Source: Mobula birostris (taxonomy: Eukaryota). Taken from it: 64,000 bases of DNA. The number at the start of each line of letters is the position of its first letter. The first letter of the stretch is position 1. Below are positions 4,283 through 55,388 of this stretch, one piece after another. The notes under the pieces were generated by a model. The model did no database searches. It had not been told where the DNA came from and saw only the letters and a list, made by a program, of their open reading frames with translations. The translations under genes were made by a program, and so were the position numbers. The DNA lies in NCBI RefSeq assembly GCF_030028105.1, contig NC_092374.1:189417074-189481073 (forward strand), read 5' to 3'.

Positions 4283-4343
4283 ATGGCCAAGAGTGGTTCT
4301 GGTATCGTCACGATTATCTGTCCGTTGCTGAACGATTCGAGAG
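4283..4343 (+). CDS. Gene A exon 1, signal-peptide exon MAKSGSGIVTIICPLLNDSR
   Basis: gaagacATGGCC start context is shared with gene B exon 1; phase-1 donor G|GTGGGA; lies in a CpG-rich patch; 9 nt shorter than the gene B exon. Confidence 0.75.
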
Positions 4344-4912
4344 GTGGGATCACGCCTTAATCCGGTGGGGGAAGGTGCTGAAGGGGATAAACGCTGAGAC
4401 CGAGGCGGGGGTGAGGGGTGGCTACAAGGTGCTTCTGTTGCTCTGTCTTTGCCCGTGCGTTGAATTTCCATCTCGATCATTTTTTACGATGTCTTTTCCT
4501 GCCCAGTTCTCTTAAGCAAGCAAGTATCTTGTGGAGGCGAGTTTCTTTATTTATTTACCTGAACCACGTTTGCCGTTGCATATCGGGGGCCGGGGTGCGG
4601 AGGAGACTTTCCGTACGGACCTTCGGTGCCTGACTGAGGGAAATGATTTGCTTCTCAGGCCACCGCGATCACGCGGTGGCGCTCGGAGTAGAGCGTGCAG
4701 CCATTTAATAATCTAAACGTGCAGAATAAATAAATAACTAAATAAACCAGGGGTTGCGTTATAGCGTAGGAGCAAAATCACTCGGTCTATATATACGGAG
4801 CTGCAAACTGCGTCTCTGCAATATGCTTAATTTCAAAGTAAGTCATTTTTTGTAAAACATGTCATGGAGAACATTAAGTTAGTGTGAACAGATTATCATT
4901 TCGACCTTAGAT

Positions 4913-7900: not shown

Positions 7901-8810
7901 ATCCTTCCTCAAATAAGGAGACCAGAACCGCATGCGGTACTCCAGGTGCAGCTTCACCAGTACCCTGTACAGTTGCAGCATAACCTCCCTGTTCTTAAGT
8001 TCAAACCCTCTAGCAATGATGGCTAACATTTCATTCGCCTTCCTGGTAGCTACTGCACCTGCAAACCAGCTTTGTGTGATTCATGCAAATTGCCCTTTTT
8101 GACACGCCTCTTCTATTTCCTGTTGTCCACATTCCAGCTGCTGTTGGGAGGCTTGTCATCAGGGGCCCTTTACCCTTGCAGTTTCTTTATTCAACTGACA
8201 AGGACGCAATGTTTTCCAATCCCATGTCACATCTTTCTACTGATTTGATGCCATTCTTTACCAGCAGAGCCAAGCCACCCTCTCTGACGACCTTCTTATC
8301 CCTCTGGTACAATGAGTAACCTTGGAGATACAGCTCCCAACTACAACCATCCTTCAGCCACAATTCAATGATGGGCACAACATCATACCCTACAATCCAT
8401 AAAAGTGCAACAAGGTCATCCACCTTATTTCTTATACTTCATGTATTGAGATATAACATTTTGAGTATTGTATTTGCTACCCTTTTTGAATCTGCAAAAG
8501 CCAAAAAAAAGCAGGCTGCAGTTATATTTTATCATCTGCCTGCCCTTCCTGATAGTCTGACTAAATGCTATCTTTGCTTTTTTACCATCTGTCTTATCCT
8601 GAGTCCCATCACTCTGATTCCCACCCTGACCCTCCCTAACTGCTCTGACAAACCAGCCCATGAGAATATTGGTTCGCCTCAGATTCAGGTGCAACCTAAC
8701 ACTTTTGAACCGGTCATAGCTCCCCCAGAAGAGATCGCAATGACCCAAAAAAACTGAAGCCCTGTCACCTGCACCAGCTCTCACCCATACATTAATTTGC
8801 CAAATCATCC
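4913..8810 (-). mobile_element. Composite of degenerate CR1 LINE ORF2 fragments (RT and APE endonuclease) in gene A intron 1
   Basis: Motifs LDFLTAFDKV, LERVQRRFT, HLEY...FWSPYLRKD and IELWLKDG..WEL, with frameshifts and stops. Confidence 0.9.
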
Positions 8811-8829
8811 TGTTGCTACCCTCATTGGC

Positions 8830-9210
8830 GCTGGAGTTTAGAAGACAAAGGAGATCTCATTGAAATTATTGAAAGGCTTAGATAGAGCGAACATGAAGAG
8901 GATGCTTCCTACAATGGGACAGTCTAGGATCATGGGGCACAGCTTCAGAGTGGAAGGACATCCCTTGGGAACAGAGATGAGTAGGGATTTTCTTTAGCCA
9001 GTGGGTGGTTAACCTGTGGAATTCATTGCTACAAACGGTTGTGGAGGCCAAATCACTGTGTAGATTTAAAGCAGAGGTTGAGATGTTCTTGTTTAGTAAG
9101 GGTATCAAAGGTTATCGGGAGAGGGCAGGAGAATGGGGTTGAAAGGGGTAATAAATCAGCCATGATGGAATGGCGGAGCAGACTCTATGGGCTGAACTGC
9201 CCAGTTCTGG
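8830..9210 (+). mobile_element. CR1 3' fragment
   Basis: agagtggaaggacatccctt...gggtggttaacctgtggaattc...gggctgaactgcc, matching the 3' ends of other CR1 copies in the window. Confidence 0.75.
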
Positions 9211-9997
9211 TGAATATTCACAAGACTCCTCGGAATATTCACATACTTTTGGGTCAAAATATTTTGCCTGGTTGGTAAACACTTGAGTACAGAAACCTAA
9301 GACTCTCAAAGTTAGTGTTGTGTGGTTGACTCTAGGTACACAAATCCCAATTATTGATTGCATCACAGAACATGTCTAATGCCTGTTTTGATGTAGGCCA
9401 ATTTACACGAGACTGATGCTTGTAATTTGGCAGTTTCACATGGGAATGAATCATGGTTGTCAGTATTAATGGCAATGCTTCTGTATCATAAACTTCATAC
9501 TTGGTTAGCAGCTGCCTTGCCCTAACAGACCCCACTGTTGACACCCTGAACAGAAACCTGTCCCAAGAAGTTTGAACTGGTTTCAGGTTACTTGGACTGC
9601 AAAGTCCCTTTACTATGGATCACTGTGTATACACAGCCTTGCATGAAGCATGACTTTCCTATGAGAAATCCACTTTCCTGCTTCAATTGTCTTCCTCCTC
9701 GGTCATTAGATATGATGTGTGCCTTTAACATTCAAGTAGTTTGCATCGTTATGTGGCATTTGACAGGAAACTGACACAATGGATCAGAGAATGGTGAAGG
9801 ATTGGTACAGGGTTGGTACAGGAAAATGGCACCGAGGTAAAAATAAAAAGCACCCCCTCTACGTGTGGTGTTGTTCCGACGTGTCTCCTTCTCCTTGTCC
9901 CAGAGCTGTGAAGACGCCATATAATGAAACTATGGACACCAACACATTGAAATTAATGACTCTAATGACATGTCCTTCTGTTTTATTTCTGGCAGAG

Positions 9998-10306
9998 CTG
10001 ATGGGAATCCAGCTACTCATCGTGTGGTGAATGGGGCACTGGGACAGTCAGTCACTTTGCCAGGAACTGTGCCAGAAGAAAACATTTCAGTCATTACTTG
10101 GGACTACATAAATACATCTAATCAAAAAAAGATTCAATTATGTGAGAAATATCAAAACAATCCAATAAAGTGTTACACAGAGAGGATTACGTTAAACCCG
10201 AAGGACTATAGCCTGGAAATACAGAACCTAGCAGACAGTGACGAAAGTTTCTATGCAAGGGCAGGTGTGGATGTCCATGAAGAAGTGACAAAACTGCAAA
10301 TTCATG
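9998..10306 (+). CDS. Gene A exon 2, IgV-like N-terminal domain (DGNPATHRVVNGALGQSVTL...DESFY...KLQIHG)
   Basis: ORF 9970-10320 has V-set hallmarks (G-Q-S-V-T-L, W in strand C, YSLEIQNL, D-x-x-x-Y) and a phase-1 donor G|GTAATA at 10307. The 5' boundary is uncertain because the ancestral AG is mutated; the in-frame acceptor is GAG 9995-9997. Confidence 0.85.
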
Positions 10307-11342
10307 GTAATATAATTTAAATTATAATATAAATTCTGATCTAACTTCTTTTAAGCAGACAAAGATGAAAGGGGAGATGTTTGTGGTCTGAGCTGAAGCC
10401 TATGGGGGGACACAAGGCAGAGGGAATACTGAACCTCTGCACAGATGCAGCACTTGTTCATTATGGAACCAGTCAGAAGCACTGTCTGTTTAAATACTGA
10501 TGGCAGGAAAACGGATTGCTCCTTTTATGGAAGGAACCTTAAGACACCAGACCTGGTGTAGATGATCTCTTACAGCAGGGATTCTCAACCTTTCTTATGC
10601 TATGAACAAATTCCATGAAGAAGAGGTCCCTGGATGCCAGCATGAAAACCTGTTTCTAAAGATGAATGTCTAGCTGCCACGTTTATATTTATTCTTTTGT
10701 CCCAGAATCCAAAATGTTCACTGGTGGGGGCTGGGGGAGGAAGTATGCCAACAGCATTAACCTCTCATTCTGGTAAAAGAACCCAGGTAGAACATAGATT
10801 ACATGGGTAAGGAATGTTACTGGTATTCACAAAGCCATTTACGCAAGTTCTGTTTTGGTGTCCTTGCCTGAAACTTGGTTCACAGGAATTCTAGGCAAAT
10901 TCTGGCTGTCTGGTGCTTGGGATGGACAGAATTGAGTACACCTTTATTCTTTACAGCTTAGAAGAATGAGATGTAATCTCACTGAATTTAAGAAATAAAT
11001 CTAAGAGGTCTTACTGTTGTGGATACATAGGGCTATCTTCCCAGCGTAATAATGCTTGATTCAGAATAAAGTTTGGGTTACTCAGGATGGAAATAGAAAG
11101 CGTGAGGTTGATAAATATTTGGTATGTTCTTCTCTAGAAGACAGAGGAGCCTTAATTATTCAACATTAAAGTAGATAGATGTTTTGTATATTAGAAGAAT
11201 TTAGGATAGTGTAAAAGTGTGATTGATGAATGGCAGAGCAGGTTTTTCCTAGCTCTACATCATAAGAGCTCATGAGAGGCTCATGGCTATTACCTACTTG
11301 TTGTCAAACCATTTTCTTTATTTGTGTTTTTCTTATAAACAG

Positions 11343-11630
11343 AAAGCATGTCGAAACCCATAATAAATACCGTCCAATTCAACTCAGATGAGGTATGTAA
11401 CATAAGCTTGCATTGTTTACTGGAGCGTGGCACAGAGCCAGCTTACACTTGGTGGACAGGAGATATTGAGGTCACGGCTGATGGGTCACATGTGCTGACT
11501 GATGGAGGGAGAAGACTGGAATTGTCCTTAAGGCTGAATGATAACACAGTGTACAACTGCACAGTGAGGAACCCTGTCAGCGAGGCATCTTCAAGTATGG
11601 ATGTCGGAAGGCCCTGTCTAGTCACAGAAG
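11343..11630 (+). CDS. Gene A exon 3, SLAM/CD48-type IgC2 domain
   Basis: Acceptor tttttcttataaacAG at 11341-11342; ESMSKP...CNISLHC...YTW...YNCTVRNPVS...PCLVTE; phase-1 donor AAG|GTGGGT. Confidence 0.9.
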
Positions 11631-12764
11631 GTGGGTCCATTACCTTTTCAAACCCCGTAAATTTTTCTTAAAATTAACCACGATTTATTCCCTTTCTCTT
11701 CTAATCTCAATCCATTTACAATAGATCAGATCAGGTCTGAGATAGATCTATGATTTCTAGGAACATGCATTCTGAGTAGAAAACTCCAGACATAACTTTG
11801 TTGCCCTATTCATTCTGGTCCCTCTATGGGTCAGTCAGAGCTTGACTGCAATTGATGGGATTCACTCAAGTTCAACACCACTGATACCACTCTAAAACTG
11901 AGATTTATGTTTGAGCTCGTCTCTCCTTCACCTGCCTGTATGACTGCATGTCTTATTAAACAGACTGTCACAAATTCCCTGAGGTATAATTGAGACAATA
12001 AAGACTCTCAAAGGACGGTGGTGGTCAGAACACTAAATATTTTGTGTCACAGGGTTAGAGAGTGGCCAATACGCCGGCAATCCTTAACACAGTAAATGAC
12101 CTTCTTCCCTCCTATATTGCGCTCTATTTTTCATTTATCCACGCGTCTATCTAAGAATCTTATTTGTGTCTCTAATGTATGTACCTGTACCATCACCCCA
12201 GACTGTGCATTCCATGCACCAATGACTTTCTATGTAAAAAAACATATCTCTGATATCTGCTCTATAGTATCATCCAACCACAGTAAAATTATGCCCATTT
12301 CTGAATGGCTATCCACTCTTATTGTCTGGAAAAAGGTGTTGACTGCCCACCCTTATACACCTTAATATATCTCTGACATTTTTCCATTAGCAGATGTTTT
12401 CATGGCTATAAGTCATAGATGCAAGGCAAAAGGCACAAGCAATAGAAGGGAACTTTTTTTATGAAATGGTTATGGGCTAGTTAAAACAGAGTCAATTCTA
12501 CTCTGATGTCTTATGATCTTATGATCTTATGGACTTCCTGCTTTCAAACTAGTGGCTTTATTTTTCTCTGGGCTTGATCCTGGGTTGAAATAAAACACTT
12601 TTAATTAACCTACAGTCACTTTCTGATGCTTAAACCTTCAGATTCAGCACTTTAGTTTTGATTGCCTTGAACTTGGCAGAAAAGTATTATGTGAATTACT
12701 AATAATGGGAAAAATGTTAAATTTAGATCTATTTAGAAATGTAGAAATCTGGTCCAAATGAGTT

Positions 12765-12950
12765 TGTGCTGCTCATTACACCCATGTGACAATTATCATA
12801 CTCAAACAAACATCTTTGGAAATTGGGAGGAAACCAAGGCACCTGGAGGAAACTCACACAGGCATGGAGAGAACATGCAAACATTTCACAGACAGCAGTA
12901 GGGAATAACCCTGTGTTGCTGCCTCTGTAAGAACCTTACACTAGCACTTT
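12765..12950 (-). mobile_element. tRNA-derived CORE/HE1-like SINE fragment
   Basis: ggaggaaaccaaggcacctggaggaaactcacac...gcaaac...cacagacagc is the reverse complement of the SINE body seen at 54700-54900. Confidence 0.65.
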
Positions 12951-12989
12951 GGTATTGAGCTGTCCCATAAACTCAGTCAATGAGGACAA

Positions 12990-14375
12990 GTCGGAAAAAT
13001 TGTCAAAAATTAAATCAGTGATAGAAGTCATCTGAATGCTGAATGAGGGTGGTGAATTTGCAAAATTCATTGCCACAGCTGGCAATGGAAGTCAAGCCAT
13101 TGGGTATATTTAGAGCAGAGGTTCATAGGTCCTTGATTTGTAAGGGCATCAAAGGTTACGACAGAATGCAGGAGAATGGAGTTGAGAGGGAAAATTTCAA
13201 AAAAGCCACGATGGAATGGTGGAGCAGATTCAATGGGCCAAATGCCCTAATTCTGCTCCCATGTCCTTTGGTCTAATCCCAAGCAGGAATGAATTGATAT
13301 GAATGATGTTGAATGCCACATGATTTTTGAACAGTAGACGGGTCATATTCTGCTTGGAGGTTAGTGACCAGTGATGTGCCTCAGGGATCTGTTCTGGGAC
13401 TCCTACTCTTTGTGATTTTTATAAATGACGTGGATGAGGAAGTGGAGGGATGGATTAGTAAATTTGCTGATGACAGAAAGGTTGCAGGTGTTGTGGGTAG
13501 TGTGGAGAGCTGTCAGAGGTTGCCACGGGACATTGATAGGATGCAGAACTGGGCTGATAAGTGGCAGATGGAGTCCAACCCAGATAAGTGTGAGATGGTT
13601 CATTTTGGTAGGCCAAATATGATGGCAGAATGTAGCATTAATGGTAAGACTCTTGGTAGTGTAGAGGATCAGAGGGATCTTGGGGTCTGAGTCCATAGAA
13701 CACTCAAAGCTGCTACGCAGGTTGACTCTGTGGATAAGAAAGCATACGGTGCTTTGGCCTTCATCAATCATGGGATTGAGTTTAAAAGCCGAGCTGTAAT
13801 GTTGCAGCTATATAGGACCTTGGTCCGACCCCATTTGCAATACTGTGCTCAATTCTGGTCACCTCACTACAGGAAGGACGTGGAAACCATAGAAAGGGTG
13901 CAGAAGAAATTTACAAGGATGTTGCCTGGATTGGGGAGCATGCCTTATGAGAATAGGTTGAGTGAACTCGGCCTTTTCTCCTTGGAGTGACGGAGGATGA
14001 GAGGTGACCTGATAGAAGTGTTCAAGATAATGAGAGGCATTGATCGTGTGGAGAGTCAGAGGCTTTTCCCCAGAGCTAAACAGCTAGCATGAAAGGGCAT
14101 AGTTTTAAGGTGCTTGGAAGTAGGTACAGAGGAGATGTCAGGGGTAAGTTTTTTACGCAGAGAGTGGTGAGTGCATGGAATGGGCTGCTGGCGGCAGTGG
14201 TGGAGGAGGAAGCGATAGGGTCTTTTAAGAGACTCCTGGATGGCGACATGGAGCTTAGAAAAATAGAGGACTATGTGTAAAACCTAGGGAGTTCTAAGGT
14301 AGGGACATGTTCGGCACAGCTTTGTGGGCCGAAGGGCCTGTATTGTGCTGTAGGTTTTATGTTTCTATGTTTCTA
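12990..14375 (+). mobile_element. CR1 3' fragments (RT C-terminal half)
   Basis: PQGSVLGLLLF, FADD, HLQYCAQFWSPHYRKD; tail gggccgaagggcctgtattgtgctg...(tttctatg)n. Confidence 0.9.
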
Positions 14376-14983
14376 GTACAATTTTCTTTCTGTCAGGAAA
14401 AATTTCATTGATGATTAATCTGGTTTAATGATTATTTTGAATGCATCAGTAGGATGACGAAGGATTTGGCGAGATAATTCTTATTCTCAAAGGTTTCTTC
14501 TGAGGACAGGGCCAAGATATAGAATTCTCAGATCTGGTTTTGGTTCTTTTTATGTGCTTTCATCTTCTCTGTGCAGAAGAGGCCATTTTACTTCATGATT
14601 CTAGCAGTATTATCAGCGATGGATAACTTTTTTGAATCGTAGTTTATTCCTGTTTTGTTCTTGAAATCTCTGATTGATTCTCGCATCGATCTCTACTCAT
14701 GCAGATAGTGAGATGCTGATCACAGCCACTCTCTATCAATCCCATGTTCCAGCCACTCCCCATTTTCACCCTTTATTCCTGTAACCCCTGATCCTTAAAC
14801 TATCTAGTTATGGGAACAGCGTCCCTCCCTTTACTCTGATTAAACCATTTGTGATCTTGCAAATCTTTATCAGCTCTCCTGTTGATCTCATCTTCACCAG
14901 TCTGCTGTGTTTTCTACTTTAAGCCAAGTTTAATTAATTTCCCAGTGTTGACAAAATCACAATGCATGTCTATCCCTTTTCAA

Positions 14984-15100
14984 GTCAGAAGCCACTGAGG
15001 CCAATCCACATTCGTTTAATTGCAACTATTGCTCTGATAGCTTTCATCACAGTTATCCTCTTCATGATCTATTGGAAGAGAGCACCAAAGTCCAATGAAG
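14984..15100 (+). CDS. Gene A exon 4, transmembrane exon (QKPLRPIHIR-LIATIALIAFITVILFMIYW-KRAPKSNE)
   Basis: 20-residue uncharged hydrophobic run at 15016-15075 followed by a KR stop-transfer motif; phase-1 donor AAG|GCAAGT. The 5' boundary is uncertain because no intact phase-1 AG is present. Confidence 0.7.
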
Positions 15101-16801
15101 GCAAGTACTCTTGAATATTAAGTCACACAGTGTAGTCCCTGGTAATATCCCATCACAATATTTGGTCTCAAGTTAGTCTTTGTTAATGGGACCTCTGGAT
15201 CTTGTCCGTTCAGGTATGGTCTCACTGGACTAGTGACTGCCTCCTGGCAATAATTAGTGGAGTGAGACTATACAACCTCCTGGGCAGGAATTCAAAGCAC
15301 TTCCTTGAACTGAGGGGAAAACAGCCCACAAGTGTGCATCATGAAATTTAGTGACTATAAAATACGATGCTTTGTAAAGTGATTCTTGTTCCAACCCCTT
15401 TTGTAGTGTGCCACAGAGTATCTCAGGTGCTCAACACACACAACCTTTGGGATATTCCTTCACTTAAGAATGGTAAGCACCGTTTCTCAGCCTATGACTG
15501 CAGAAAGAAGTTTTTGCAATGCCTGGTGGTTCTTCTATTGAACAAATTAAAGGATACTATTCGACATATATATTCAACAAAATGAGTCCCATTTCAGGTA
15601 TTGGCACCCTGGCCATTCTTCACACCTTGACCTACACAACCCTTATTCCCATGGTTCCAACCCACAAAACTGGGCACGCCCTCTGCCTTTGCTTGACTGG
15701 CAATACCAACCTGATCAGACAAGCTCTGCCCCAGCTACAAATCTCAAACATTTCTTCACCACCAACAGAATGGAACTCAGATTCCTCTTTGTAGTCCAGC
15801 ACATAAAGGAATGGTCTTCCCTTGCATGTTCTCCAATGCTTGGAATATGGATTTCCTTTCTGTTCATCAACCAGCGGTGTGCCTCTTATAGGGTCTAAGA
15901 ATATGCAAGGTCAAAGTTTGAACTACATTTAGGAGCTCAGTTCACAAGAGTAATATCTGAGTTGCCAGGAGCCAAGGTAACTCCTAGTGAAGAGAGATGC
16001 ATTGCAGAACAGGAATACCTGTTGCTCTGAAGAGCCATGTAATGGACTCTGCTCTTAAAAGTTTATGTGATGTTCTTGTATCTGTATTCAACTTAGAGTA
16101 GGTCACAGATAATGTAATCTCTTAGCTGTGCTGCACGTGCTTCATTATGAATTGCAAATATTTCTTGAATGTTGTGCACAGATGGAGGAGATTGAAGCAA
16201 CACAGAGATTACAGCACAAAATCATTATTGTGAGGAAATTAAAGAAAAAAAATATTCTGGGAATCTTTCAATTGAGATTAAAGGTGATTAAAATATTTAT
16301 GAATTGGACAGTCTGAAGAACAAGTGAGACAGCCTGAAAGGAAGGAATGGTTTATTTGGAAAAGTGAAATTTCAGACACTGAGTCAAGCAATGTTAATGG
16401 CAGTAACTTGCTTGGATTTCTGTTTCCATCCCACCCTGCCTGCCCTCCACACTATCTATAATTCTGCTACTTCACCATATTTGAATGTGTCACTGTATGT
16501 CAACTTCCAGGGTGTCAAAGGAAAGGATAAAGGAGGACAGGAACAGCGAAGCCTTGGGAACATTGTCTGTAGGATAAACCAATCCAACTTCTGGTCTTTT
16601 CCCTTGTGGTATTTTAAGCAGAACTGTACAAATCCAAAGTTCTGCACATTGTCTCTTCAATCATTTTTTTCCAGTTTGAGAAACTCTTTCATATTTCCTC
16701 TCAATCTCCGATTTCTTACAAAACTGGTGACATGAGCAGAATATGACATGTAGAATTGAACAATTCTATTCTGCTCTCCATCTTTGTTGCTGCCTACACA
16801 G

Positions 16802-16880
16802 AAACCTGTGTCATTTCTCTGCCACCATGCAGTGTTACATATTCCTCTACTTTGGGTACAGATAATTCGCCATTGCCTAT
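16802..16880 (+). CDS. Gene A candidate cytoplasmic exon 5 (ETCVISLPPCSVTYSSTLGTDNSPLP)
   Basis: Pyrimidine-rich acceptor ...gcctacacAG and donor |GTAAGG; open when entered in phase 1, exits in phase 2. Confidence 0.45.
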
Positions 16881-17869
16881 GTAAGGTCTGAATGGGAAGT
16901 TTTATATCCAATAACACAGACCTTTCTTATATTGTGGAAATTGGAGATGATTAGGGATGATCAACAATTCTTTTGGAGGGAACATTCAGGATGACTAACA
17001 TCATGATGTAAATGTCAATTCACCTAGAATTTACACAGGTAGTTTCTTAAATTGTATTATCTATGAAGAATACTCCCACTTCCTTTTACTGTGAAGAAAG
17101 GAACTCCACTATGGTTATTATTTTTCCTTCCGAATAAATGATTTTACTTGGTCCAAAGTCTACTGTACAGCTTTGATATCAATGAGATATAACAGGATAC
17201 CTCATCCCTGGTGGAAGTTTATAAATGGGCCTGGATGGCAGCTGGGTAGGTCAGGGAAAGGGAGTTCCCACAGTCTACCTATTGATGCTATGATCAGACT
17301 CGCCTGAGATGTCCTTGTGTTTGTGTGGTCAGTCAGGTTTCTAAATGGATAAAGTATGGCTGGTGGAAGGACTCAGCAAAGGTTACCTTTAAGTGGAAGA
17401 ATATTTGGAGAAAATATTCACTTAAAAGAAAACAGAAGGAGAATCCAGACATGGTTCCAAAAGTGATTGCTTTTTATTTAAAGCTCCTAATACTGAAAGG
17501 AGAATTGAATCAGTGCTTATGCTGTGATCAGGAGAGCAAACCTTGCCAATGACCAGGTCAGTACAAGCTGCAAAAGTCTGTTGGGCTTACTCTCTCCCAT
17601 TATCTCCACTTTCCTCAGTTTCAATAACAAATATCCAGTGATACTTTCAACAAGAGCAAAGTTACCCACACCCTGATCAGTTTCCCTCCTTCTCCACCTG
17701 AATTCTAGTCTTCTATCTGATGGTGTGGGGGAGAATCCATTTGATAAAGGCTTCATGCTTTGCAGAAGAGAATTTCAATTTGATTATGTCACAATGTTAC
17801 AGCACATCTCACTCAGTCCATTGTATCCACACCATCCAAACAGAGCTACCAATACCAACTCCTCTCCAG

Positions 17870-17909
17870 CTCTGTCTGCACTATTATAGAATACAGCACA
17901 TCAGATGTG
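17870..17909 (+). CDS. Gene A candidate cytoplasmic exon 6 (ISVCTIIEYSTSDV)
   Basis: Acceptor ctcctctccAG and donor GTG|GTGAGG; enters in phase 2 and exits in phase 0, matching both neighbours. Confidence 0.4.
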
Positions 17910-19139
17910 GTGAGGGTTTCTGTCTTCTCCTCTTTCAGTAGGCAAGTCTCAAACAGCCATCAAAATTTTCAGTTTTCTTCCAACCTTACCATAGAATCAG
18001 GGCTTCAGAGCAAATGGATAGGTCTCCTTTCTCTTTATCAACCCCCACTACTCAACTCTGTCCTCTAGGACAGACAGCAAGTATTGCGGAACTGGGCAGG
18101 GCAGTTTCATCCATTAGTTACTCTGCTGAGAAATGCCTCAGCCATGTGGAAGTAACAGTGCACCCATCTGCCAGAATACCAATACTCCCTTGTTCTTTAA
18201 TTGTGGGATCTGGTGTGTACTGATAAGGCCAGCATTTATCACCTACCCTTAAATGCTCTTGAGAAGGTGGTGGAGAACTGCCTTTCACCGCTAGAATCTA
18301 TTTCGAGGACTGCTGAGGAAGGTTTTCCAGGCTTTAGACTCACCAAAGGTAAACAAACAGGTGGCCACTTCATTAGTTACTTCCTGTACCTAATAACACC
18401 TTGTATTCCATCTGGGTAGCTTCCAACTTCATTGCATGAATATGCTTTCTCCATGCAGTTAAAAATCCCTCTTGCTCCCCTCTTCTTCTATTCTTCCCTT
18501 TGGCATCTTACCCCTTCCTTTCCAATCAAGAAGGAGGTCAGTCTGAAAAGCCGACTGTGTACTCATCTGAGTAGATGGTGCCAGACCTGCTGATTTCCTC
18601 CAGCAATTTGGTGTGTTTGCATCATCTGTCAAATTTCTCGTGTTTATGCTTACCATCACCTTCTCAAGGCCAATTAAGGATGAGTAACATACAGTAGCTT
18701 TCTCAGTGATGCTCTGATCCAGAGAAAAGAAATAAAAATCAAAATTACAACATGACCCCAGAACCCATTCGTTGACCATGGTGGGATCTGATGAGGTCAT
18801 TTAAGGGTTGTTTCATCCTGATCACATGAAGTCTGCTCTCAGGTGCTTTCAACATGGCCCGGATGTTAGATTGATGGGATTGCAAGAACAGGATGACACC
18901 TCTGTCATAATTTCATGAGTTTCTCTGTAGTCTTTTTCCAATTTATCGAGCTTGTCTCTAATCTTTGGTTTTGTGTGTTTTCTCTCACTCCCTCATCTTG
19001 CATTTGTTGCTAGCAACAAGATATCTCTTTAAACAATTTCCTTCTGATTTCTGTTCCTTCATCACTGGGCATTTTTCCGATAAATGTTTCTCCCACCCTG
19101 TTTCATTCTGACTGCGTGCTTTGTTCTTTCTGCTGCTTA

Positions 19140-19560
19140 AGACCATAAGAGAATAAGATATAGGAGCAGAAGTGGGCTGATGGAGTCTGCTCCGCCATTC
19201 AATCATGGGCCGATCCAATTCTTCCAGTCATCCCCACTCCCCTGCTTTCACCCCATACCCTTTGATGCCCTGGCTAATCAACAGCCACTCGTGGCAAAAA
19301 ACTCTACCGATTGACCACCCTCTGACTAAATTAATTTCTCCGTATCTCAGTTCTAAAAGGACGTTCTTCAATACTGAAGTTGTGCCCTCTTGCCCGAGAA
19401 GCCCCTACCATGGGAAATAACTTTGCCATATCTAATCTGTTCAGGCCTTTTAATATTCGGAATGTTTCTATGAGATCACGCCTCATTCTCCTGAACTCCA
19501 GGGAATACAGCGCAAGAGCTGCCAGACGTTCCTCATATGGTACCTTCCATGAGTTCATGA
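19140..19560 (-). mobile_element. CR1 3' fragment
   Basis: YEERLAALALYSLEFRRMRRDLIETFRIL in ORF 19331-19675; accataaga tail. Confidence 0.85.
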
Positions 19561-20425
19561 ATCCAACAGAACCCCTTTCAATCTCTTTTAGCCATCTCAG
19601 TGTGACTAAGATATGGTATGAGGCTTTTCCGCCCAGACTGGGTGGGAGAGAGTGACTACAGGACATTTGAAACATGAGTAGAGTTTGAAAATTTTACAGA
19701 ACTTGCATTTATGTATTGACTTTATGTAGTAAAAAATTTCATGGGAACTTGATGGTGTTAATGATCTATTGGCACTGTGCCCATTAACAAAAACTGAAGC
19801 CAGGCAGCCAGAGGCTCAATCACTAAGTTTTACAGAGGTAGAAAAATATGACAGGATTCGGATGGATTTCATTGTTTCAGGATTTTACAACTGATGGGAT
19901 GTAGCAATCTAATCAGTTTGTAGCTACCTCCAGAGATGAGACAAAGGTTTATAGAGGATTATACAGCTCAGAGAGATTACAGTCAAGAAGGGGCAAGTCC
20001 CCATGGGAGAACAAAAAAGTATTCTGTTTTTAAATCACCAATAAGTTTTGTCCCATTATCAAAGCAGTTGTAGAGATTATGCAGCTCAATGTGGTTTGAA
20101 TGCAAACTTCAGAAACTGTGGAAACTGCAGGAATAACCAGTCACTTTGGTCCCACACCATGGGTTGAGTAAAAATGCAGGCGAGTAATCAGATAACAGGT
20201 AGGACTGGGACAAAAAACAGCAGAGTGAGAGAGCAGTCAGTGCTAAATGAACTAACCATATCACATTTAAAACAATCCTGATAAGCTGATAACCTTCATG
20301 GTTATATCCACTTATTACTCAGCTTTGGATCTTTTAAGATTGCTGGTGAACAATAAGGAATAATCAAACCTTTATCTGCATCACACTGACAGTACAGATT
20401 TCCTTCAAAAATACCGACATTTTAG

Positions 20426-20560
20426 AAATCTGTCTGCACAAGACCACAGGACGTGACTCTGTACACTGAGATATTCCAGCAATATTCCACAAGACATTAT
20501 GGAAGCTTCTCTATAGCCAAACAACATAGCTCTCCCTCCCCTCAGTATAAAGGTCCCTAA
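20426..20560 (+). CDS. Gene A candidate terminal coding exon with ITSM (KSVCTRPQDV-TLYTEI-FQQYSTRHYGSFSIAKQHSSPSPQYKGP*)
   Basis: Acceptor cattttAG at 20424-20425, phase 0; TxYxxI motif at 20456-20473; TAA at 20558-20560; AATAAA downstream at 20845. Confidence 0.5.
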   Translation, partial: KSVCTRPQDVTLYTEIFQQYSTRHYGSFSIAKQHSSPSPQYKGP

Positions 20561-20844
20561 CAATTAGAAAACACTTTTGACATTACTTTATAATACAAAG
20601 TCTCTTTGTTTCACAGTATACTTTAAAGATTACACAGAGCTTTTCAATTCATTGATTTCCAGTGCTAAAATGTGTCTCCGTGTCCAAAAACTATCCTGTA
20701 TTCTGCTCCGTTTAGATAATTTTCTGCATTATCTCCTTGGACTATATCTTTCAAGAACAAGTCAGATAATCACAAGGTCTAAACACATGTTCTTTGAAAT
20801 TACTTTCTTTCCAGCCACAGAGACATTTACATCAACTGGATTCC

Positions 20845-20850
20845 AATAAA
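20845..20850 (+). terminator. Candidate polyadenylation signal of gene A
   Basis: AATAAA about 285 nt after the predicted stop codon. Confidence 0.35.
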
Positions 20851-21134
20851 AGACGGCAAAGTCCAAGGGCACAGCTCACAATGACATACAGTCCTGATGT
20901 GAACACCTTGTGGCAGCAGCAAACATGGAAGAGGAGTTCGACAATCAACACATCACTGCATGAAACATAAACATGGCATTGAAGTGTACTTTACTCCCAG
21001 CAATTTCCTGTACTGCCTACAGCTGATACATTGGCTTACACATTGGGAGAGCGGACCATGTGTTGGAACAGGTTTCCAATGAGAAGCTGGATAAACCCAA
21101 AAAGAAATGTTGGAAATAAACCATAGGGCAATGA

Positions 21135-23120
21135 GTTCTAAGGGGAAATAGGGAGGTAGATGCATGATTTATACCTCACAGATGAGTTTTGAAGAAGTGT
21201 GATGGATGGATAGCTTTCATTGAAGGAAGATCAGGGAAGACTCACTAGGTTCATTCATGGTATCAAAGGGTTACCTTATAAGGAAAGATTGGGTAGGTTG
21301 AATCTAACCTGATCGGAGGTTATACGGTAAACCCCTGACTGTACTGATGATTAAGATTCTGCATAAATTTGACAAGATCGATGCTGAGGTAATGTTTCTC
21401 CTTATGTTGAATCTAGTTTGAGAAAATATCACAGTTTAAGGAGGCAACAAAATGGAGTTTCTTTTCAGGGGATTGTAAACATTTGTACTTTGTGGAGGCT
21501 GAATCATTGTGTATTTCAAGGCTGCAACTTCCAGATTTTTAGTCTACAGTTAGTCAAAGGTTATGCAGGAAAGTTGAGCTTAAGCCATAGACAGATCAGA
21601 CATGATCTTTGGCAGAGGAGCTTGAGGATTTTGAAGGAAACCACTGCCTCTACATGTGTATACTCAGGTAGAAGTGCTGTGCATGAGCTGTCAACCACAG
21701 TGTATTTCCACCATTTCCCTTTTGTTATGGTTATCATTCGGCCATGACATTTTGTATTTTATTCAATTAACTTTTTTTTTACTGATGCATTTCCCTGTGT
21801 GATGGTGGTATGTTTGCTCTTTTCCAACATAAATGTGTTGTCATTTTTTAATAAAGCATTTGGAATTGGTATGGCTTTAAACAAAGGTGCTCGGTGGTGT
21901 GACTTAGAAGGGCCCATTGACTTAGAAATTCCAGCATGCGTTGAAGGAGTAATGTGCTGGAATGGTGAAGAAGCAGTGGAACTACTGCCAGCAAAAAAAA
22001 ATGTTGCTGCAGGAACTCAGCAGTTCAAGGAGCATCGGATTGTAAAGGTGGAGTGGGGGGTGGGGGGAGGGGGACAAAGAGATTCTCAAAGCTCTGGATC
22101 AGGACCTCAGATCAACTACTATTTGGTCAAACCACATCGGAGATTGAGATCAAAAGCTTTGCTGGTAAGTGACCGGTTTCAGGTTCACTGAAGGAAGTTC
22201 TCAGAGAATCTTCCTAAAGGGGAAAACTGCAGTGAATAAAAGACGGGTAGGTGGGGGCATGGTCTGTATCTAGCAGATGAGTTACAAAGAAGCGTGATGG
22301 GTTAATAGCTTGTATTGGAGGTAGATCAAGGAAGACTTACTAGGTCCATTCATGGGATCAAAAGGTTATCTTATAAGGAAAGGTTGAGCAGGTTGAATCT
22401 ATGCTAATCTGAGGTTATATAGTTAACTGCTGAACATGCTGAAGATTAACATTCTGACTAGATTTGACAAATTGATGCTGAGATAATATTTCTCCTTATG
22501 GGGAATCTAGAACTGGATATGTAGTTTCAGAAAATATCACAGTTTAAGGTGGTATCAAAATGGAGTTTCTCCTCATGGGATTGTAAACATTTGGACTTTG
22601 TGGAGGCTGAATCATTGGAATTTGCAGCCTTGCAATACACAGGTTCTTAATCTGCAGCTAGTCAGGGGTTACACAGTAGAGTTGAGCAAAGCCAAAGCAA
22701 GATCAGATATGATCTTACTGAATGACAGAGCAGGTTTGAGCATCTTGAAGTAAACCACTGCCTCTACATATGTATGCTCAGGTAGAAGTGTTGAGCATGA
22801 GCTGTCAACCACAGTTTATTTCCATCATTTCCAGTTTGTTACAGTTATCATTCAGCCATGTATGTTTTTATTTAATTTAATTTAATTATTAAACTAGACA
22901 TTTAACTTTTTTATTGATGTATTTCCCTGTGTAATGGTACTATGCCCACTCTTTGCCAGCACATTTGTGTTCTCCTTTTGTCAACAAAACATTTGCAATT
23001 GTTATGGCTTTCAACAAATTGTGCCTCAGTGGTCTGGCACAGAAGAGGTCCAGTAACAACACTGACCTAGAAATTCCATCAGGCCTTAAAGAAGCAATGC
23101 ACTGCAATGTTGAAAATGCA
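21135..23120 (+). repeat. Diverged direct duplication with ~1.1-kb period (21135-21975 vs 22240-23120)
   Basis: Collinear matches such as aaccactgcctctacat.tgtat.ctcaggtagaagtg...gagctgtcaaccacag in both units. Confidence 0.85.
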
Positions 23121-27344: not shown

Positions 27345-30300
27345 TTCTATAACCATATAACCATATAACAATTACGGCATGGAAACAGGCCATCTCGGCC
27401 CTTCTAGTCCGTGCCGAACGCTTACTTTCACCTAGTCCCACTGACCTGCACTCAGCCCATACCCTCCATTCCTTTCCTGACCATATAGCTATCCAATTTA
27501 ACTTTAAATGACAACATCGAACCTGCCTCAACCACTTCTGCTGGAGGCTCGTTCCACACAGCTACCACACTCTGAGTAAAGAAGCTCCCCCTCATGTTAC
27601 CCCTAAACTTTTGCCCTTTAACTCTCAACTCATGTCCTCTTGTTTGAATCTGCCCCACTCTCAATGGAAAAAGCCTGTCCACGTCAACTCTATCTATCCC
27701 CCTCATAATTTTAAATACCTCTATCAAGTCCCCTCTCAACCTTCTATGCTCCAAAGAATAAAGACCCAACTTGTTCAACCTTTCTCTGTAACTTAGGAGA
27801 TGAAACCCAGGTAACATTCCAGTAAATCTTCTCTGTACTCTCTCAATTTTGTTAACATCTTTCCTACAATTTGGTGACCAGAACTATACACAATACTCCA
27901 AATTTGGCCTTACCAATGCCTTCTACAATTTCAACATTACATCCCAACTCCTATACTCAATGCTCTGATTTATAAAGGCCAGCATACCAAAAACTTTCTT
28001 CACCACCCTATCCACATGAGATTCCACCTTCAGGGAACTATGCACCATTATTCCTACATCCTTCTGTTCTACTGCATTCTTCAATGCCCTACCATTTACC
28101 ATGTCTGTCCTATTTTGATTAGTCCTCCCAAAATGTAGCACCTCACATTTATCAGCATTAAACTCCATCTGCCATCTTTCAGCCCACTCTTCTAATTGGC
28201 CTAAGTCTCTCTGCAAGCTTTGAAAACCTACTTCATTGTCCACAACTCCACCTATCTTAGTATCATCTGCATATTTACTAATCCAATTTACCACCCCATC
28301 ACCCAGATCATTAATATATGTGACAAACAACATTGGACCCAGCACAGTTCTCTGAGGCACACCACTAGACACCGGCCTCCAATCTGACAAACAGTTATCC
28401 ACCACTACTCTCTGGCATCTCCCATCCAGCCACTGCTGAATCCATTTTACTACTTCAATATTAATACCTAACGATTGAACCTTCCATGTGGAATCTTGTC
28501 AAGGCCTTACAGAAGTCCATATAAACAACATCCACCGTTTTACCCTCATCAACTTTCCTAGTAACCTCATCAAAAAATTCAATAAGATTTGTCAAACATG
28601 AACTTTCACGCACAAATCCATGTTGATTGCTTCTAATCAGACCCTGTCTATCCAGATAATTAAATATACCATCTCTAAGAATACTTCCCATCAATTTACT
28701 CACCACTGTCGTCAAACTCACAGGCCGATAATTGCTAGGTTTACTCTTAGAACTTTTTTAAACAATGGAACAACATGATCAATACACCAATCCTCCCCAT
28801 TTCTAATGACATTTGAAATATTTCTGTCGGAGTCACTTCTATTTCCACAGTATCATCCCTCAAGGTCCTTGGGAATATCCTGTCAGGACCCAGAGACTTA
28901 TCCACTTTTATATTCCTTAAAAGCACCAGTACTTCCTCTTCTTTCATCATCATAGTTTCCATAACTACCGTATTTGTTTTCCTTATCTTACACAATTCAA
29001 TATCCTTCTCCTTAGTGAATACCGAAGAAAAGAAATTGTTCAAAATCTCTTTTGGCTCTGCACATAGCCATCCACTCTGATTCTCTAAGGGACCAATTTT
29101 ATCCCTCACTATCCTTTTGCTATTAGTATAACTGTAGAAACCCTTTGGATTTATTTTCACCTTACTTGCCAAAGCAACCGCATATCATCTTTTAGCTTTC
29201 TTGATTTCTTTCTTAAGATTCTTTTCACATTCTTTATATTCCTCGAGCACCTCATTTACTCCAAGCCGCCTATTTTTATTGTAGATCTCTCTCTTTTTCT
29301 GAAACAAGTTTCCAATATCCCTTGAAAACCATGGCTCTTTCAAACTTTTAACCTTTCCTTTCAACCTAACAGGAACATGAAGATTCTGTACCCTCAAAAT
29401 TTCATCTTTAAATGACCTCCATTTCTCTATTACATCTTCCTATAAAACAAATTGTCCCAATCCACTCCTTCTAAGTCCTTTCACATCTCCTCAAAGTTAG
29501 CCTTTCTCCAATCGAAAATCTCAACCCTGGGTCTGGTCCTATCCTTCTCCGTAATTATATTGAAACTAATGGCATTGTGATCACTGGACCCGAAGTGCTC
29601 CCCAACACATACCTCTGTCACCTGACCTATCTCATTCCCTAACAGGAAATCCAACACTGCCCCTTCTCTAGTTGGTACCTGTATGTATTGCTGCAAAAAT
29701 TATCTTGCATACATTTTACAAACTCCAAACCATCCAGCCCTTTTACAGAATGGGTTTCCCAGTCTATGTGTGGAAAATTAAAATCTCCCACAATCACAAC
29801 CTTGTGCTTACTACAAATATCTGCTATCTCCTTACAAATTTGCTCCTCCAATTCTCGCTCCCCATTAGGTGGTCTATAATACACCCCTATAAGTGTTACT
29901 ACACCTTTCCCATTCCTCAATCTAACCCAAATAGCCTCCCTAGACGAGTCCTCTAATCTATCCTGCCAAAGCACCTCTGTAATATTTTCTCTGACAAGCA
30001 ATGCAACACCTCCCCCTCTTGTCCCTATCACACCTGAAGCAATGAAATCCAGGAATTTTTAGTTGCCAATCACACCCCTCCTGCAACCATGTTTCACTAA
30101 TAGCTACATCATATTTCCAGGTACCAATCCATGCTCTAAGCTCATCCACCTTTCTTACAATGCTCCTAGCATTAAAATAGATGCATTAAGGAACTCTCCA
30201 CCTCTTACTCTCGGTTTATCCCTAATGGTGCAAACAACTTTGTTATCTCTTTCTTCCTTCTCCCCTACATCTTCGGTTTGAGTGCTCCCATTCTCTGTCC

Positions 30301-36292: not shown

Positions 36293-37830
36293 TTAAGACC
36301 ATAAGACCATAAGACAAAGGAACAGAAGTCGACCATTCAGCCCATCGAGCCTGCTCTACCATTTTATCATGAGCTGATCCATTCTCCCATTTAATCCCAC
36401 TCCCCCGCCTTCTCACCATAACCTTGATGCCCTAGCTACTCAGGTACCTATCAATCTCTGCCTTAAATGCACCCAATGACTTGGCCTCCACTGCTGCCCG
36501 TGGCAACAAATTCCATAGATTCACCACACTCTGACTAAAAAAAATTCTTCGCCTTTCTGTTCTGAATGGGCGCCTTTCAATCCTTAAATCATGCCCTCAC
36601 ATACTAGACTCCCCCATCATGGGAAACAACTTTGCCACATCCACTCTGTCCATGCCTTTCAACATTCGAAATGTTTCTATGAGGTCTCCCCTCATTCTTC
36701 TAAACTCCAAGGAATACATTCCAAGAGCGGACAAACGTTCCTCATGTGTTAACCCTCTCATTCTCGGAATCATTCTAGTGAATCTTCTCTGTACCCTCTC
36801 CAACGTCAGCACATCCTTTCTTAAATAAGGAGACCAAAACTGCCCACAGTACTCCAAGTGAGGTCTCACCAGCCCCTTATAGAGCCTCAACATCACATCC
36901 CTGCTCCTATACTCTATTCCTCTAGAAATGAATGCCAACATTGCATTCGCCTTCTTCACTACAGACTCAACCTGGAGGTTAACACTAAGGGTATCCTGTA
37001 CGAGGACTCCCAAGTCCCGTTGCATCTCAGAACTTTGAATTCTTTCCCCATTTAAATAATAGTCTGCCCGTTTATTTCTTCTGCCAAAGTGCATAACCAT
37101 ACACTTTCCAACACTGTATTTCATTTGCCACTTCTTTGCCCATTCTTCCAATCTATCCAAGTCTCTCTGCAGACTCTCCGTTTCCTCAGCACTACCGGCT
37201 CCTCCACCTATCTTCGTATCATCAGCCAACTTAGCCACAAAGCCATCTATTCCATAATCCAAATCCATTGATGTACAATGTAAAAAGAAGCGGCCCCAAC
37301 ATGGACCCCTGTGGAACACCACTGGTAACCGGCAGCCAACCAGAATAGGATCCCTTTATTCCCACTCTCTGTTTCCTGCCAATCAGCCAACGTTCTATCC
37401 ACGTATGTAACTTTCCCATAATTCCATGGGCTCTTATCTTGTTAAGTAGCCTCATGTGTGGCACCTTATCAAAGGCCTTCTGAAAATCCAAATATACAAC
37501 ATCCACTGCATCTCCCTTGTCTAGCCTACTGGCAATTTCCTCAAAAAATTGTAATAGGTTTGTCAGGCAGGATTTTCCTTTAAGGAATCCATGCTGAGTT
37601 CTGCCTATCTTGTCATATGCCTCCAGGTACTCTGTAACCTCATCCTTGACAATCGACTCCAACAACCGATGTCAAGCTAACAGGTCTATAATTTCCTTTT
37701 TGCTTCCTTGCCCCCTTCTTAAATAACAGAGTGACATTTGCAATCTTCCAGTCCTCCAGAACCATGCCAGAATCTATCGACTTTTGAAAGATCATCGCTA
37801 ATGCCTCTGCAATCTCCACAATATTGAAGG
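36293..37830 (-). mobile_element. Relatively young 5'-truncated CR1 (RT domain)
   Basis: ORFs of 241 aa and 144 aa with LDFQKAFDKV, PQGSMLGP and LADD; (accataag)n tail. Confidence 0.93.
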
Positions 37831-55318: not shown

Positions 55319-55388
55319 ATGGCCAGGACAGCTTCTGGGATCCTCTCCGGCGTCATGATTATTTACCTGCTGTTGAGCGATTCGGGAG
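55319..55388 (+). CDS. Gene B exon 1, signal peptide MARTASGILSGVMIIYLLLSDSG (continues VLA-ETD in exon 2)
   Basis: ATG at 55319 in gacATGG context; hydrophobic core; phase-1 donor G|GTTGGT. Confidence 0.82.

What the first reader, a model, noticed from the sequence alone, without database searches (positions are those of the whole stretch)
15016..20560. Reconstructed TM and tyrosine-rich tail with an ITSM for gene A, absent from the ORF track
Seen: four short segments with plausible splice sites chain in phase (1, 1-2, 2-0, 0-stop), giving an uncharged TM and a ~90-aa tail with TLYTEI plus VTYSST, IEYSTS and three further Tyr. Established: TxYxxV/I is the ITSM bound by SAP/EAT-2 and SHP phosphatases in SLAM receptors. 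Inference: gene A is or was a switch-type signalling receptor. Caveat: several TxYxx[VI] matches are expected by chance in 40 kb, so the phase chain and position carry the argument.
Basis: partly seen in the sequence, partly recalled or inferred. Interest (0 to 1): 0.7.

Follow-up and report, generated by a model that had tools for sequence, protein, structure and literature searches.

The report
Decayed ray SLAM-family gene; ITSM tail artefact

Summary
The four segments exist and translate as described, but only the first is a real exon.

**What is real.** Cartilaginous-fish relatives annotated as SLAM-like (Mobula, Hypanus, Pristis, Heptranchias, Callorhinchus) match the TM exon, 14984-15100. 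Its GC donor at 15100 is conserved.

**Where the true tail lies.** The relatives' tails map to two other exons:
- cyt1, 17484-17556
- cyt2, 20815-20970

- An 8.5-kb Pristis ortholog stretch (introns included) aligns collinearly with window 14416-21629 at about 68-70%.
- In Pristis they lose the acceptor, most of the second segment, and the Tyr of TLYTEI.
- One TxYxx[VI] in 5.7 kb is about the chance expectation (~0.6).

**State of gene A.** Intact relatives carry an ITIM-like SVLYAVI and an ITSM TTIYDEI. In gene A:
- a 1-bp deletion at the first Tyr codon gives a premature stop;
- a 15-bp deletion removes the ITSM core;
- the V and TM exon acceptors are lost (CAG>TAT, CAG>CAA);
- further indels are present.

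Gene A "was" an ITSM receptor; it is now most likely a pseudogene. The scan has already reported broken SLAM-like copies elsewhere in this genome.

**Side note.** The family's last exon is read in two frames, selected by tandem GC/GT donors.

The parts
4283..4343 (+). Gene A leader exon: ATG, signal peptide, phase-1 donor G|GTGGGA. It has a 9-bp in-frame deletion in the hydrophobic core relative to gene B and Pristis.
   Evidence: tblastn of P0001; three-way DNA alignment; coordinates
9984..9998 (+). Lost V-exon acceptor. Gene B and Pristis have TTTCAG|TTCTGG; gene A has TTTTAT|TTCTGG. A 1-bp deletion follows (GAG-CTGAT). Of the cryptic AGs, the exon start at 9996 is out of frame and the start at 9998 is in frame. 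The same deletion frameshifts the alternative intronless start ORF (9932 onward).
   Evidence: (the P0057 match is split over two frames)
9987..10306 (+). Gene A V-set Ig exon. The ORF is intact, there is a 3-codon deletion in the F-G region, and the donor is phase 1.
   Evidence: Pfam V-set E 2.4e-8; 60-63% identity to Mobula, Hypanus and Pristis proteins
11343..11630 (+). Gene A C2-type Ig exon with four Cys. The acceptor is AAACAG| and the donor AAG|GTGGGT (phase 1).
   Evidence: Pfam Ig_3; 67-78% identity to relatives; splice scores
14984..15100 (+). True TM exon (GQKPLRPIHIR-LIATIALIAFITVILFMIYW-KRAPKSNE). The canonical acceptor is lost: position 14983 is A where Pristis and Heptranchias have TCAG| and Callorhinchus TTAG|. 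The neighbouring AGs, giving exon starts at 14985 and 14989, enter in phases 2 and 0 and do not fit the phase-1 C2 donor. The 3' end is a conserved GC donor, AAG|GCAAGT.
15101..15104 (+). Four bases between the tandem donors. The GT donor after 15104 (GGCAA|GTACTC; relatives have GGCAG|GTACT) gives the short isoform, which reads the last exon in frame a.
16802..16880 (+). It is intronic. In Pristis the acceptor is CTG, there are two 1-bp indels plus a 14-bp gap just past the donor, stops occur in every frame, and identity is 68%, the intron background.
17484..17556 (+). True cytoplasmic exon 1, 73 nt against 74 nt in Pristis. It encodes APNTERRIESVL / YAVIRRANLANDQ with a 1-bp deletion (between 17517 and 17518) just before the Tyr codon of the ITIM-like SVLYAVI motif. 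The reading becomes ...ESVLML and then a stop. Both splice sites are kept.
   Evidence: (P0060, P0057 and P0058 each match in two frames that meet at 17518). This is the most conserved stretch of the whole Pristis alignment: 0.83 in the 150-column profile, 0.84 for 17460-17580.
17870..17909 (+). It is intronic and largely absent from Pristis (32-bp gap, 30% identity).
20426..20560 (+). It is intronic, with a poor acceptor (-8.1). In Pristis an 8-bp gap removes the Tyr codon, and 11-bp and roughly 148-bp insertions break the ORF.
20815..20970 (+). True last coding exon. Frame b (long isoform) reads PQRHLHQLD...AQLTMTYSPDV... A 15-bp in-frame deletion at about 20889 fuses two Tyr codons and removes the ITSM core (relatives have TTIYDEIKYNPDV). 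A further 1-bp deletion lies near 20910. The frame-b stop is at 20968-20970.
20816..20884 (+). The same exon in frame a (short isoform): HRDIYINWIPIKDGKVQGHSSQ, then a stop. It is 73-74% identical to Pristis isoform X3 and ends five codons early.

Best explanation
Gene A (+ strand, 4283-20970) is an unprocessed, decaying duplicate of a cartilaginous-fish CD2/SLAM-family receptor gene.

**The family plan (shown in Pristis, Heptranchias and Callorhinchus).** It has six exons:
- leader
- V-set Ig
- C2-set Ig
- TM
- cyt1, carrying an ITIM-like [SV]xYAxI motif
- cyt2, carrying the ITSM TTIYDEI

**Inferred function of intact members.** By analogy with mammalian SLAM receptors, they signal through phosphorylation of these two tyrosines and recruitment of SH2 proteins (SAP/EAT-2 or SHP/SHIP).

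**Gene A.**
Those three are chance open stretches within the two cytoplasmic introns.
- Both tyrosine motifs are destroyed: a 1-bp deletion gives a premature stop, and a 15-bp deletion removes IYDEI.
- The V-exon and TM-exon acceptors are mutated.
- Further indels lie in the leader, the V exon and the last exon.

The locus therefore cannot make the ITSM receptor and is most likely a pseudogene. The lesions are shown directly. Loss of expression or function is inferred.
For: **Family.**
- phmmer of the V exon against 1.84e9 representatives finds 39 proteins. The top ones are SLAM-like proteins of rays, sharks and chimaera.
- Pfam gives V-set and Ig_3.
- The best solved structure covering the whole ectodomain of the relative P0059 is SLAMF6, 2if7, E 2e-12.

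**True exons.**
- tblastn and blastp of the relatives hit 14986-15111 (64% identity, E 5e-11).
- They hit 17459-17556 in two frames that meet at 17518.
- They hit 20812-20951 (E 1e-13).

**Collinearity.**
- Pristis L001 41000-49500 aligns to window 14416-21629 at 68-70% identity, introns included.
- Identity peaks at the true cyt1 exon (0.83-0.84).
- Over each reader segment plus 20 bp either side it is 0.68, 0.30 and 0.39.

**Lesions.** Four-way alignments with three intact genes show each lesion in gene A only. The conceptual splice gives ...NEAPNTERRIESVLML and then a stop.
Against: - The V and C2 ORFs of gene A are still open. A lineage-specific count of nonsynonymous against synonymous codon changes shows no clear relaxation: A 20:10, B 16:2. 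Decay is therefore recent, or part of the gene is still used.
- Frame-restoring cryptic routes exist on paper. One is the AG at 9996-9997 combined with the 1-bp deletion. Another is the weak phase-0 donor CCC|GTAAAT at 11656 combined with the acceptor that starts the exon at 14989.
- The short-isoform frame of the last exon is still open.
- No transcript data were available.
- Single-base indels could in principle be assembly errors.
Confidence: 0.86

Rival explanations
1. Gene A splices 15100>16802, 16880>17870 and 17909>20426, and makes a receptor with a lineage-specific tyrosine-rich tail whose TLYTEI acts as an ITSM.
For: The chain is in phase and open, and TLYTEI is a perfect TxYxxI. The internal sites score moderately: acceptors 4.9 and 0.6, donors 6.0 and 9.0. 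The canonical tail is dead, so replacement by new exons is conceivable.
Against: - No homology to any of 61 family proteins.
- Not conserved in the collinear Pristis introns: the acceptor, the ORF and the Tyr are lost.
- The terminal acceptor is worse than the median AG.
- The motif count is at the chance level, and millions of alternative chains exist.
- The upstream V and TM acceptor lesions would affect this transcript too.
Confidence: 0.03
2. Gene A is still expressed through cryptic splice sites as a motif-less protein. It would be either a short-tailed receptor (frame a tail NEGNHRDIYINW...) or a soluble V-C2 protein, that is, a decoy or SLAMF8/9/CD48-like derivative rather than a dead gene.
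For: - The V and C2 ORFs are intact, with no excess of nonsynonymous change.
- The 1-bp deletion after the lost V acceptor makes the AG at 9996-9997 in frame.
- The frame-a tail is open and 73-74% identical to Pristis X3.
- An exon start at 14989 joined to the canonical C2 donor would give a secreted form (own translation).
Against: - The in-frame cryptic V acceptor (GAG|) lies 2 nt behind a much better out-of-frame CAG| (scores -1.1 against 7.2).
- No phase-1 acceptor exists for the TM exon.
- The -1 G of the short-isoform GT donor is mutated (GCAG>GCAA, score 1.0).
- The signal peptide has lost three residues.
Confidence: 0.08
3. The lesions are assembly errors or a private null allele. In the population gene A is an intact ITIM+ITSM SLAM-like receptor using the canonical exons 17484-17556 and 20815-20970.
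For: Three of the lesions are single-base deletions, a common error class. The exons are otherwise well conserved (84% identity around cyt1).
Against: There are at least seven independent lesions of different kinds in one gene: two base substitutions at acceptors, deletions of 15, 9 and 9 bp, and three 1-bp deletions. None is in a long homopolymer. Gene B, 45 kb away, is clean over its exons in the window.
Confidence: 0.03

Closest known systems
Predicted cartilaginous-fish SLAM-like genes, e.g. Pristis pectinata XP_051899442.1 (P0040), Hypanus sabinus SLAMF9-like X2 (P0060), Mobula hypostoma Ly-9-like (P0059)
   Same: - The same six-exon plan and collinear introns.
- V and C2 are 60-78% identical, the TM exon 56-64%, and cyt1 and cyt2 are recognisable.
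- The tandem GC/GT donor at the end of the TM exon is shared.

   Different: Gene A alone has lost two acceptors, is frameshifted in cyt1 and in the last exon, and lacks the ITSM core.
Mammalian SLAM-family receptors (SLAMF1, 3, 4, 5, 6, 7). The best structural relative is SLAMF6/NTB-A, PDB 2if7.
   Same: - A V-set domain without the canonical disulfide, followed by a four-Cys C2 domain.
- A single uncharged TM.
- A tail made of small exons carrying TxYxx[VI] motifs in intact relatives.
- ITSM biochemistry as described in PMC3958483.
   Different: - Only about 2e-12 sequence similarity.
- The chondrichthyan genes have one ITIM-like motif plus one ITSM, rather than two to four ITSMs.
- Orthology to any single mammalian member is not established.
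- SAP/EAT-2 binding is untested.
- Gene A itself has no ITSM in its true exons.
CEACAM1 and the CEA family
   Same: - The strongest PDB sequence hit over the C2 region is CEA, 1e07, E 7e-18.
- From my own knowledge, CEACAM1 also has a disulfide-less N domain and ITIM-type tyrosines, and makes long and short tails by skipping a small exon, which shifts the frame of the downstream exon. That is the same logic as the long and short isoforms here.
   Different: - The CEA match covers only residues 97-217, whereas SLAMF6 covers the whole ectodomain.
- The four-Cys C2 pattern and the weak 2B4 Pfam hit point to CD2/SLAM.
- NCBI names the relatives SLAM-like.

Membership tests
CD2/SLAM receptor family | Ectodomain of a membrane-distal V-set Ig domain lacking the canonical B-F disulfide, plus a membrane-proximal C2-set domain with two disulfides (four Cys) | tested here: met
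   - Pfam V-set (E 2.4e-8) and Ig_3.
- The V exon has no Cys at the B and F strand positions; it reads ...SDESFYARAG.
- The C2 exon has the pattern C..C...C...C.
- The relative P0059 aligns over both domains to SLAMF6, 2if7, E 2e-12.
- CEA scores higher, but on the C2 part only.
CD2/SLAM receptor family | Gene plan of leader / V / C2 / TM / small cytoplasmic exons, with phase-1 boundaries around the Ig exons | tested here: inconclusive
   The plan is met in Pristis, Heptranchias and Callorhinchus. In gene A all six exons are present in order, but the V and TM acceptors are destroyed.
CD2/SLAM receptor family (signalling members) | At least one ITSM, TxYxx[VI], in the cytoplasmic tail | tested here: not met
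   Relatives have TTIYDEI. In gene A's true last exon the 15-bp deletion leaves QLTMTYSPDV, which is not an ITSM. The cyt1 Tyr codon is frameshifted. The only TxYxx[VI] in the interval, TLYTEI at 20456, lies in non-conserved intron.
CD2/SLAM receptor family (signalling members) | Phosphotyrosine-dependent binding of SAP/EAT-2 and SHP/SHIP | not testable with these tools
   This needs peptide binding or co-immunoprecipitation. The background is PMC3958483.
Unprocessed pseudogene | Retains introns and synteny with a functional paralog or ortholog, and carries disabling lesions absent from intact relatives | tested here: met
   - Introns are collinear with Pristis, and gene B is a tandem paralog.
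- The lesions are two lost acceptors, three 1-bp deletions and deletions of 15, 9 and 9 bp. Each is seen in gene A only.
- Lack of expression was not tested.
CEACAM family | An N-terminal disulfide-less V domain followed by single-disulfide C2 A/B domains, with orthology to CEACAM genes | tested here: inconclusive
   CEA and CEACAM1 chains are the top PDB sequence hits for the C2 region (E 7e-18 to 3e-12). However, the C2 domain here has four Cys, and the whole-ectodomain match is to SLAMF6. No tree was built.

The most novel reading that the evidence does not exclude
In this receptor family, gene A's remnants included, the last coding exon is truly dual-coding and works as a splice-selected signalling switch.
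- Tandem donors 4 nt apart at the end of the TM exon (AAG|GCAG|GTACT) are conserved from chimaera to rays.
- Together with inclusion or skipping of cyt1 they select the frame of the last exon.
- Frame b gives the ITIM-like plus ITSM tail.
- Frame a gives a conserved short tail, GS.RDIY[VI]NW.P. Its Y-x-N would be a Grb2-type SH2 site.
- Gene A could then survive as a short-tail-only copy.
Probability: 0.25. Interest if true: 0.5.

Novelty: new member of a known kind. Interest (0 to 1): 0.18.

Why it matters
As a gene it matters little. It is one more broken copy in an expanded SLAM-like cluster, and its intact relatives are already computer-annotated in several rays and sharks.

The useful results are two:
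- **A corrected annotation.** It gives the true TM, cyt1 and cyt2 exons and a list of lesions.
- **A caution for ab initio exon chaining.** A phase-consistent chain ending in a perfect ITSM can arise by chance in 5.7 kb of intron. Intron-level collinearity with a distant ray, together with the relatives' protein sequences, resolves the question at once.

The family-level observation is the only part that might interest a comparative immunologist. It comprises an ITIM-like motif plus an ITSM conserved across chimaera, sharks and rays, and tandem GC/GT donors that toggle the frame of the last exon.

Tried and rejected
- **Phase-1 acceptor for the TM exon.** This led to the AG>AA lesion rather than to an alternative exon.
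I considered this because it lies about 1.7 kb after the TM exon and contains SVxY. I rejected it: the true cyt1 lies at 17484-17556 with 84% DNA identity to Pristis, and segment 2 aligns to Pristis intron with its acceptor lost.
- **Relative-rate test.** The nonsynonymous against synonymous count on the V and C2 exons, with Pristis as outgroup, was uninformative: A 20:10, B 16:2.
- **Fetching ortholog DNA.** The look-up of encoding contigs returned no DNA for the Mobula or Cetorhinus proteins (files too large) and had no record for P0003, P0010 or P0060. The closest orthologs could therefore be compared only as proteins.
- **Literature.** Two full-text searches found no paper on SLAM-family genes of cartilaginous fish.

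Full report
**1. The observation**

They join in one open frame. The product is an uncharged hydrophobic stretch followed by a 92-residue tail with TLYTEI, VTYSST, IEYSTS and six tyrosines. The letters are as described. The splice sites are weaker than claimed:
- 15016 is not preceded by AG.
- The donor after 15100 is GC.
- The acceptor at 20426 scores -8.1 on a simple position-weight model, below the median of all AG sites in the window.

**2. What the locus is**

The window is vertebrate DNA full of LINE reverse-transcriptase debris. It holds two tandem genes on the + strand.
- Gene A has a V-set Ig exon (9987-10306) and a C2-type Ig exon (11343-11630).
- Gene B has its leader at 55319, its V exon at about 60.75-61.08 kb and its C2 exon at 62.02-62.31 kb.
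- A and B are about 76% identical in DNA from 9623-12356 against 60494-63039. The similarity then ends, so gene B's downstream exons lie off the window.

An exhaustive phmmer search with the gene A V exon found 39 proteins. The best are predicted proteins of rays, sharks and a chimaera: Mobula, Hypanus, Pristis, Rhinoraja, Narcine, Heptranchias, Scyliorhinus and Callorhinchus. A second search on the tail of a full-length relative added Cetorhinus. NCBI names them SLAM family member 5-, 7- or 9-like, SLAM-like or Ly-9-like.

For the relative P0059, the best solved structure spanning the whole ectodomain is SLAMF6 (2if7, E 2e-12). CEA and CEACAM chains score higher, but only over the C2 part.

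**3. The family's real tail**

Full-length isoforms share one tail plan, for example P0040, P0045, P0048 and P0057-P0061:
- The TM exon ends in ...NE.
- A 24-residue exon follows, with an ITIM-like motif (SVLYAVI, VQYAEI or IVYADI).
- The last exon reads QPQ.HL.QLD......QLTTIYDEIK.NPD..., with a canonical ITSM.

Mapping the proteins on fetched DNA gives the same six-exon plan in three species: Pristis pectinata (L001), Callorhinchus (L002) and Heptranchias (L003).

**4. Where those exons are in gene A**

tblastn of the relatives against the window gives three sets of hits:
- The TM exon, 14986-15111, at 64% identity and E 5e-11.
- 17459-17556. This match comes in two pieces in two frames that share base 17518.
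- 20812-20951.

In a blastp against all 61 family proteins, those segments reach only E 0.4-1.7. The true exons reach 1e-8 to 1e-13.

**5.

Pristis L001 41000-49500 aligns collinearly with window 14416-21629 at 68-70% identity, introns included. A global alignment shows the following.
- Identity peaks at the true cyt1 exon: 0.83 in the 150-column profile and 0.84 for 17460-17580.
Its acceptor reads CTG in Pristis, there are two 1-bp indels, and stops occur in every frame.
- Segment 3 falls largely in a 32-bp gap (30% identity).
- In segment 4 an 8-bp gap removes the Tyr codon of TLYTEI. An 11-bp insertion and one of roughly 148 bp break the ORF.

**6. Chance**

- There is one TxYxx[VI] in the three forward frames of 15101-20810. 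The window-wide rate of 0.11 per kb predicts about 0.6.
- With any AG/GT allowed, about 1.7e7 phase-compatible three-exon chains exist.
- Eight other two-internal-exon chains with equal or better site scores also reach 20426 in phase.
- Six Tyr in 92 residues has P = 0.09.

The phase chain and position therefore carry no weight.

**7. State of gene A**

Alignments with gene B and three intact genes show lesions in gene A only.
- **(a) Leader.** A 9-bp deletion in the signal-peptide core.
- **(b) V-exon acceptor.** CAG has become TAT (9984-9986), followed by a 1-bp deletion. The good cryptic CAG| (exon start 9996) is out of frame. Only the weak GAG| (exon start 9998) is in frame. The same deletion frameshifts the alternative intronless start used in a Mobula model.
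- **(c) V domain.** A 3-codon deletion.
- **(d) TM-exon acceptor.** TCAG has become TCAA (14983). The nearby AGs give exon starts at 14985 and 14989, which enter in phase 2 or 0 and do not fit the phase-1 C2 donor.
- **(e) cyt1.** A 1-bp deletion lies just before the Tyr codon, so the canonical splice reads ...NEAPNTERRIESVLML and then a stop.
- **(f) Last exon, ITSM.** A 15-bp deletion fuses two Tyr codons and removes IYDEI, leaving QLTMTYSPDV.
- **(g) Last exon, C-terminus.** A further 1-bp deletion near 20910.

Against a long-dead gene:
- The V and C2 ORFs are open.
- The lineage-specific nonsynonymous to synonymous count is not elevated.
- The short-isoform frame of the last exon is open.

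I therefore read gene A as a recently inactivated, decaying duplicate. The main alternative (about 0.08) is survival as a motif-less short or soluble form through cryptic sites.

**8.

- The TM exon is real.
- The unusual GC donor at 15100 is the conserved long-isoform donor. It reads AAG|GCAGGT in Pristis, Heptranchias and Callorhinchus, and AAG|GCAAGT in gene A.
- The ancestral gene did encode an ITSM receptor.

**9. How the family works**

This part is inferred. By analogy with mammalian SLAM receptors (PMC3958483 for ITSM specificity), intact members would engage a ligand through the V domain. They would signal through the phosphorylated ITIM-like and ITSM tyrosines.

Annotated isoforms add a splice-selected frame change:
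- The GC donor plus cyt1 gives frame b of the last exon, which carries the ITSM.
- The GT donor 4 nt downstream, with cyt1 skipped, gives frame a (GS.RDIY[VI]NW.P...). This isoform is annotated in Callorhinchus, Scyliorhinus, Heptranchias and Pristis.
- A third frame is used in one Heptranchias isoform.

Substitutions among the three intact DNAs fall into two patterns:
- In the ITSM part, 6-8 are synonymous only in frame b and 0-1 only in frame a.
- In the 5' part, 3-5 are synonymous only in frame a and 2-6 only in frame b.

This hints that both frames are constrained in the 5' part. The counts are small. From my own knowledge, CEACAM1 long and short tails arise by a similar exon-skip frameshift, so the principle is not new.

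**10. Verdict**

- The thing itself is a new, broken member of a known and already computer-annotated family.
- Earlier notes of this scan report other intact and decayed SLAM-like copies elsewhere in the same (manta-ray-like) genome. I did not test them.
- Interest is low.

Noticed in passing
window 15097-15104 and 20815-20970; L001 41707-41720 and 48576-48749; L003 22081-22096 and 37737-37893; L002 16325-16335 and 18984-19121: Tandem GC/GT donors 4 nt apart at the end of the TM exon are conserved from chimaera to rays. With cyt1 inclusion or skipping they set the frame of the last exon, and all three frames appear in annotated isoforms. Frame a gives a conserved DxY[VI]NW tail (a YxN motif). 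Substitution classes suggest constraint in both frames in the 5' part of the exon.
   Followed up: partly
window 55319-55388, 60674-61084, 62020-62312: Gene B looks intact over the exons present: leader, V and C2, with all splice sites matching Pristis. Its C2 exon is 91% identical to Mobula hypostoma Ly-9-like (P0059). An ORF contiguous with the V exon (MLELPCCG..., from 60674) matches the N-terminus of a Mobula model (P0057), so it may be an alternative first exon with its own signal peptide.
   Followed up: partly
window 14416-21629 vs L001 41000-49500: Introns of this ray and of the sawfish Pristis align end to end at 68-70% identity over more than 7 kb, broken only by insertions (for example 18350-19550, which holds a LINE fragment). 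This is a useful resource for exon finding in these slowly evolving genomes.
   Followed up: partly
window 51455-52561 (+), 36597-37665 (-), 27452-28405 (-), 13364-14375 (+), 19137-19675 (-): Many fragments of one LINE family with reverse-transcriptase ORFs (motifs FADDTK..., MRGDLIE.YK). Two of them lie inside gene A introns.
   Followed up: no
proteins P0001 (Mobula XP_062905755.1) and P0002 (Hypanus XP_059827205.1): Both are probably chimeric gene models. P0001 has two V domains and reads through the TM-exon donor (GKYS). P0002 replaces the TM and tail with a long unrelated C-terminal half that looks transposase-derived.
   Followed up: no
window 20845-20850: An AATAAA hexamer created inside gene A's last coding exon (codons S-N-K in frame b). 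The relatives do not have it at this position. Whether it causes premature polyadenylation is unknown.
   Followed up: no
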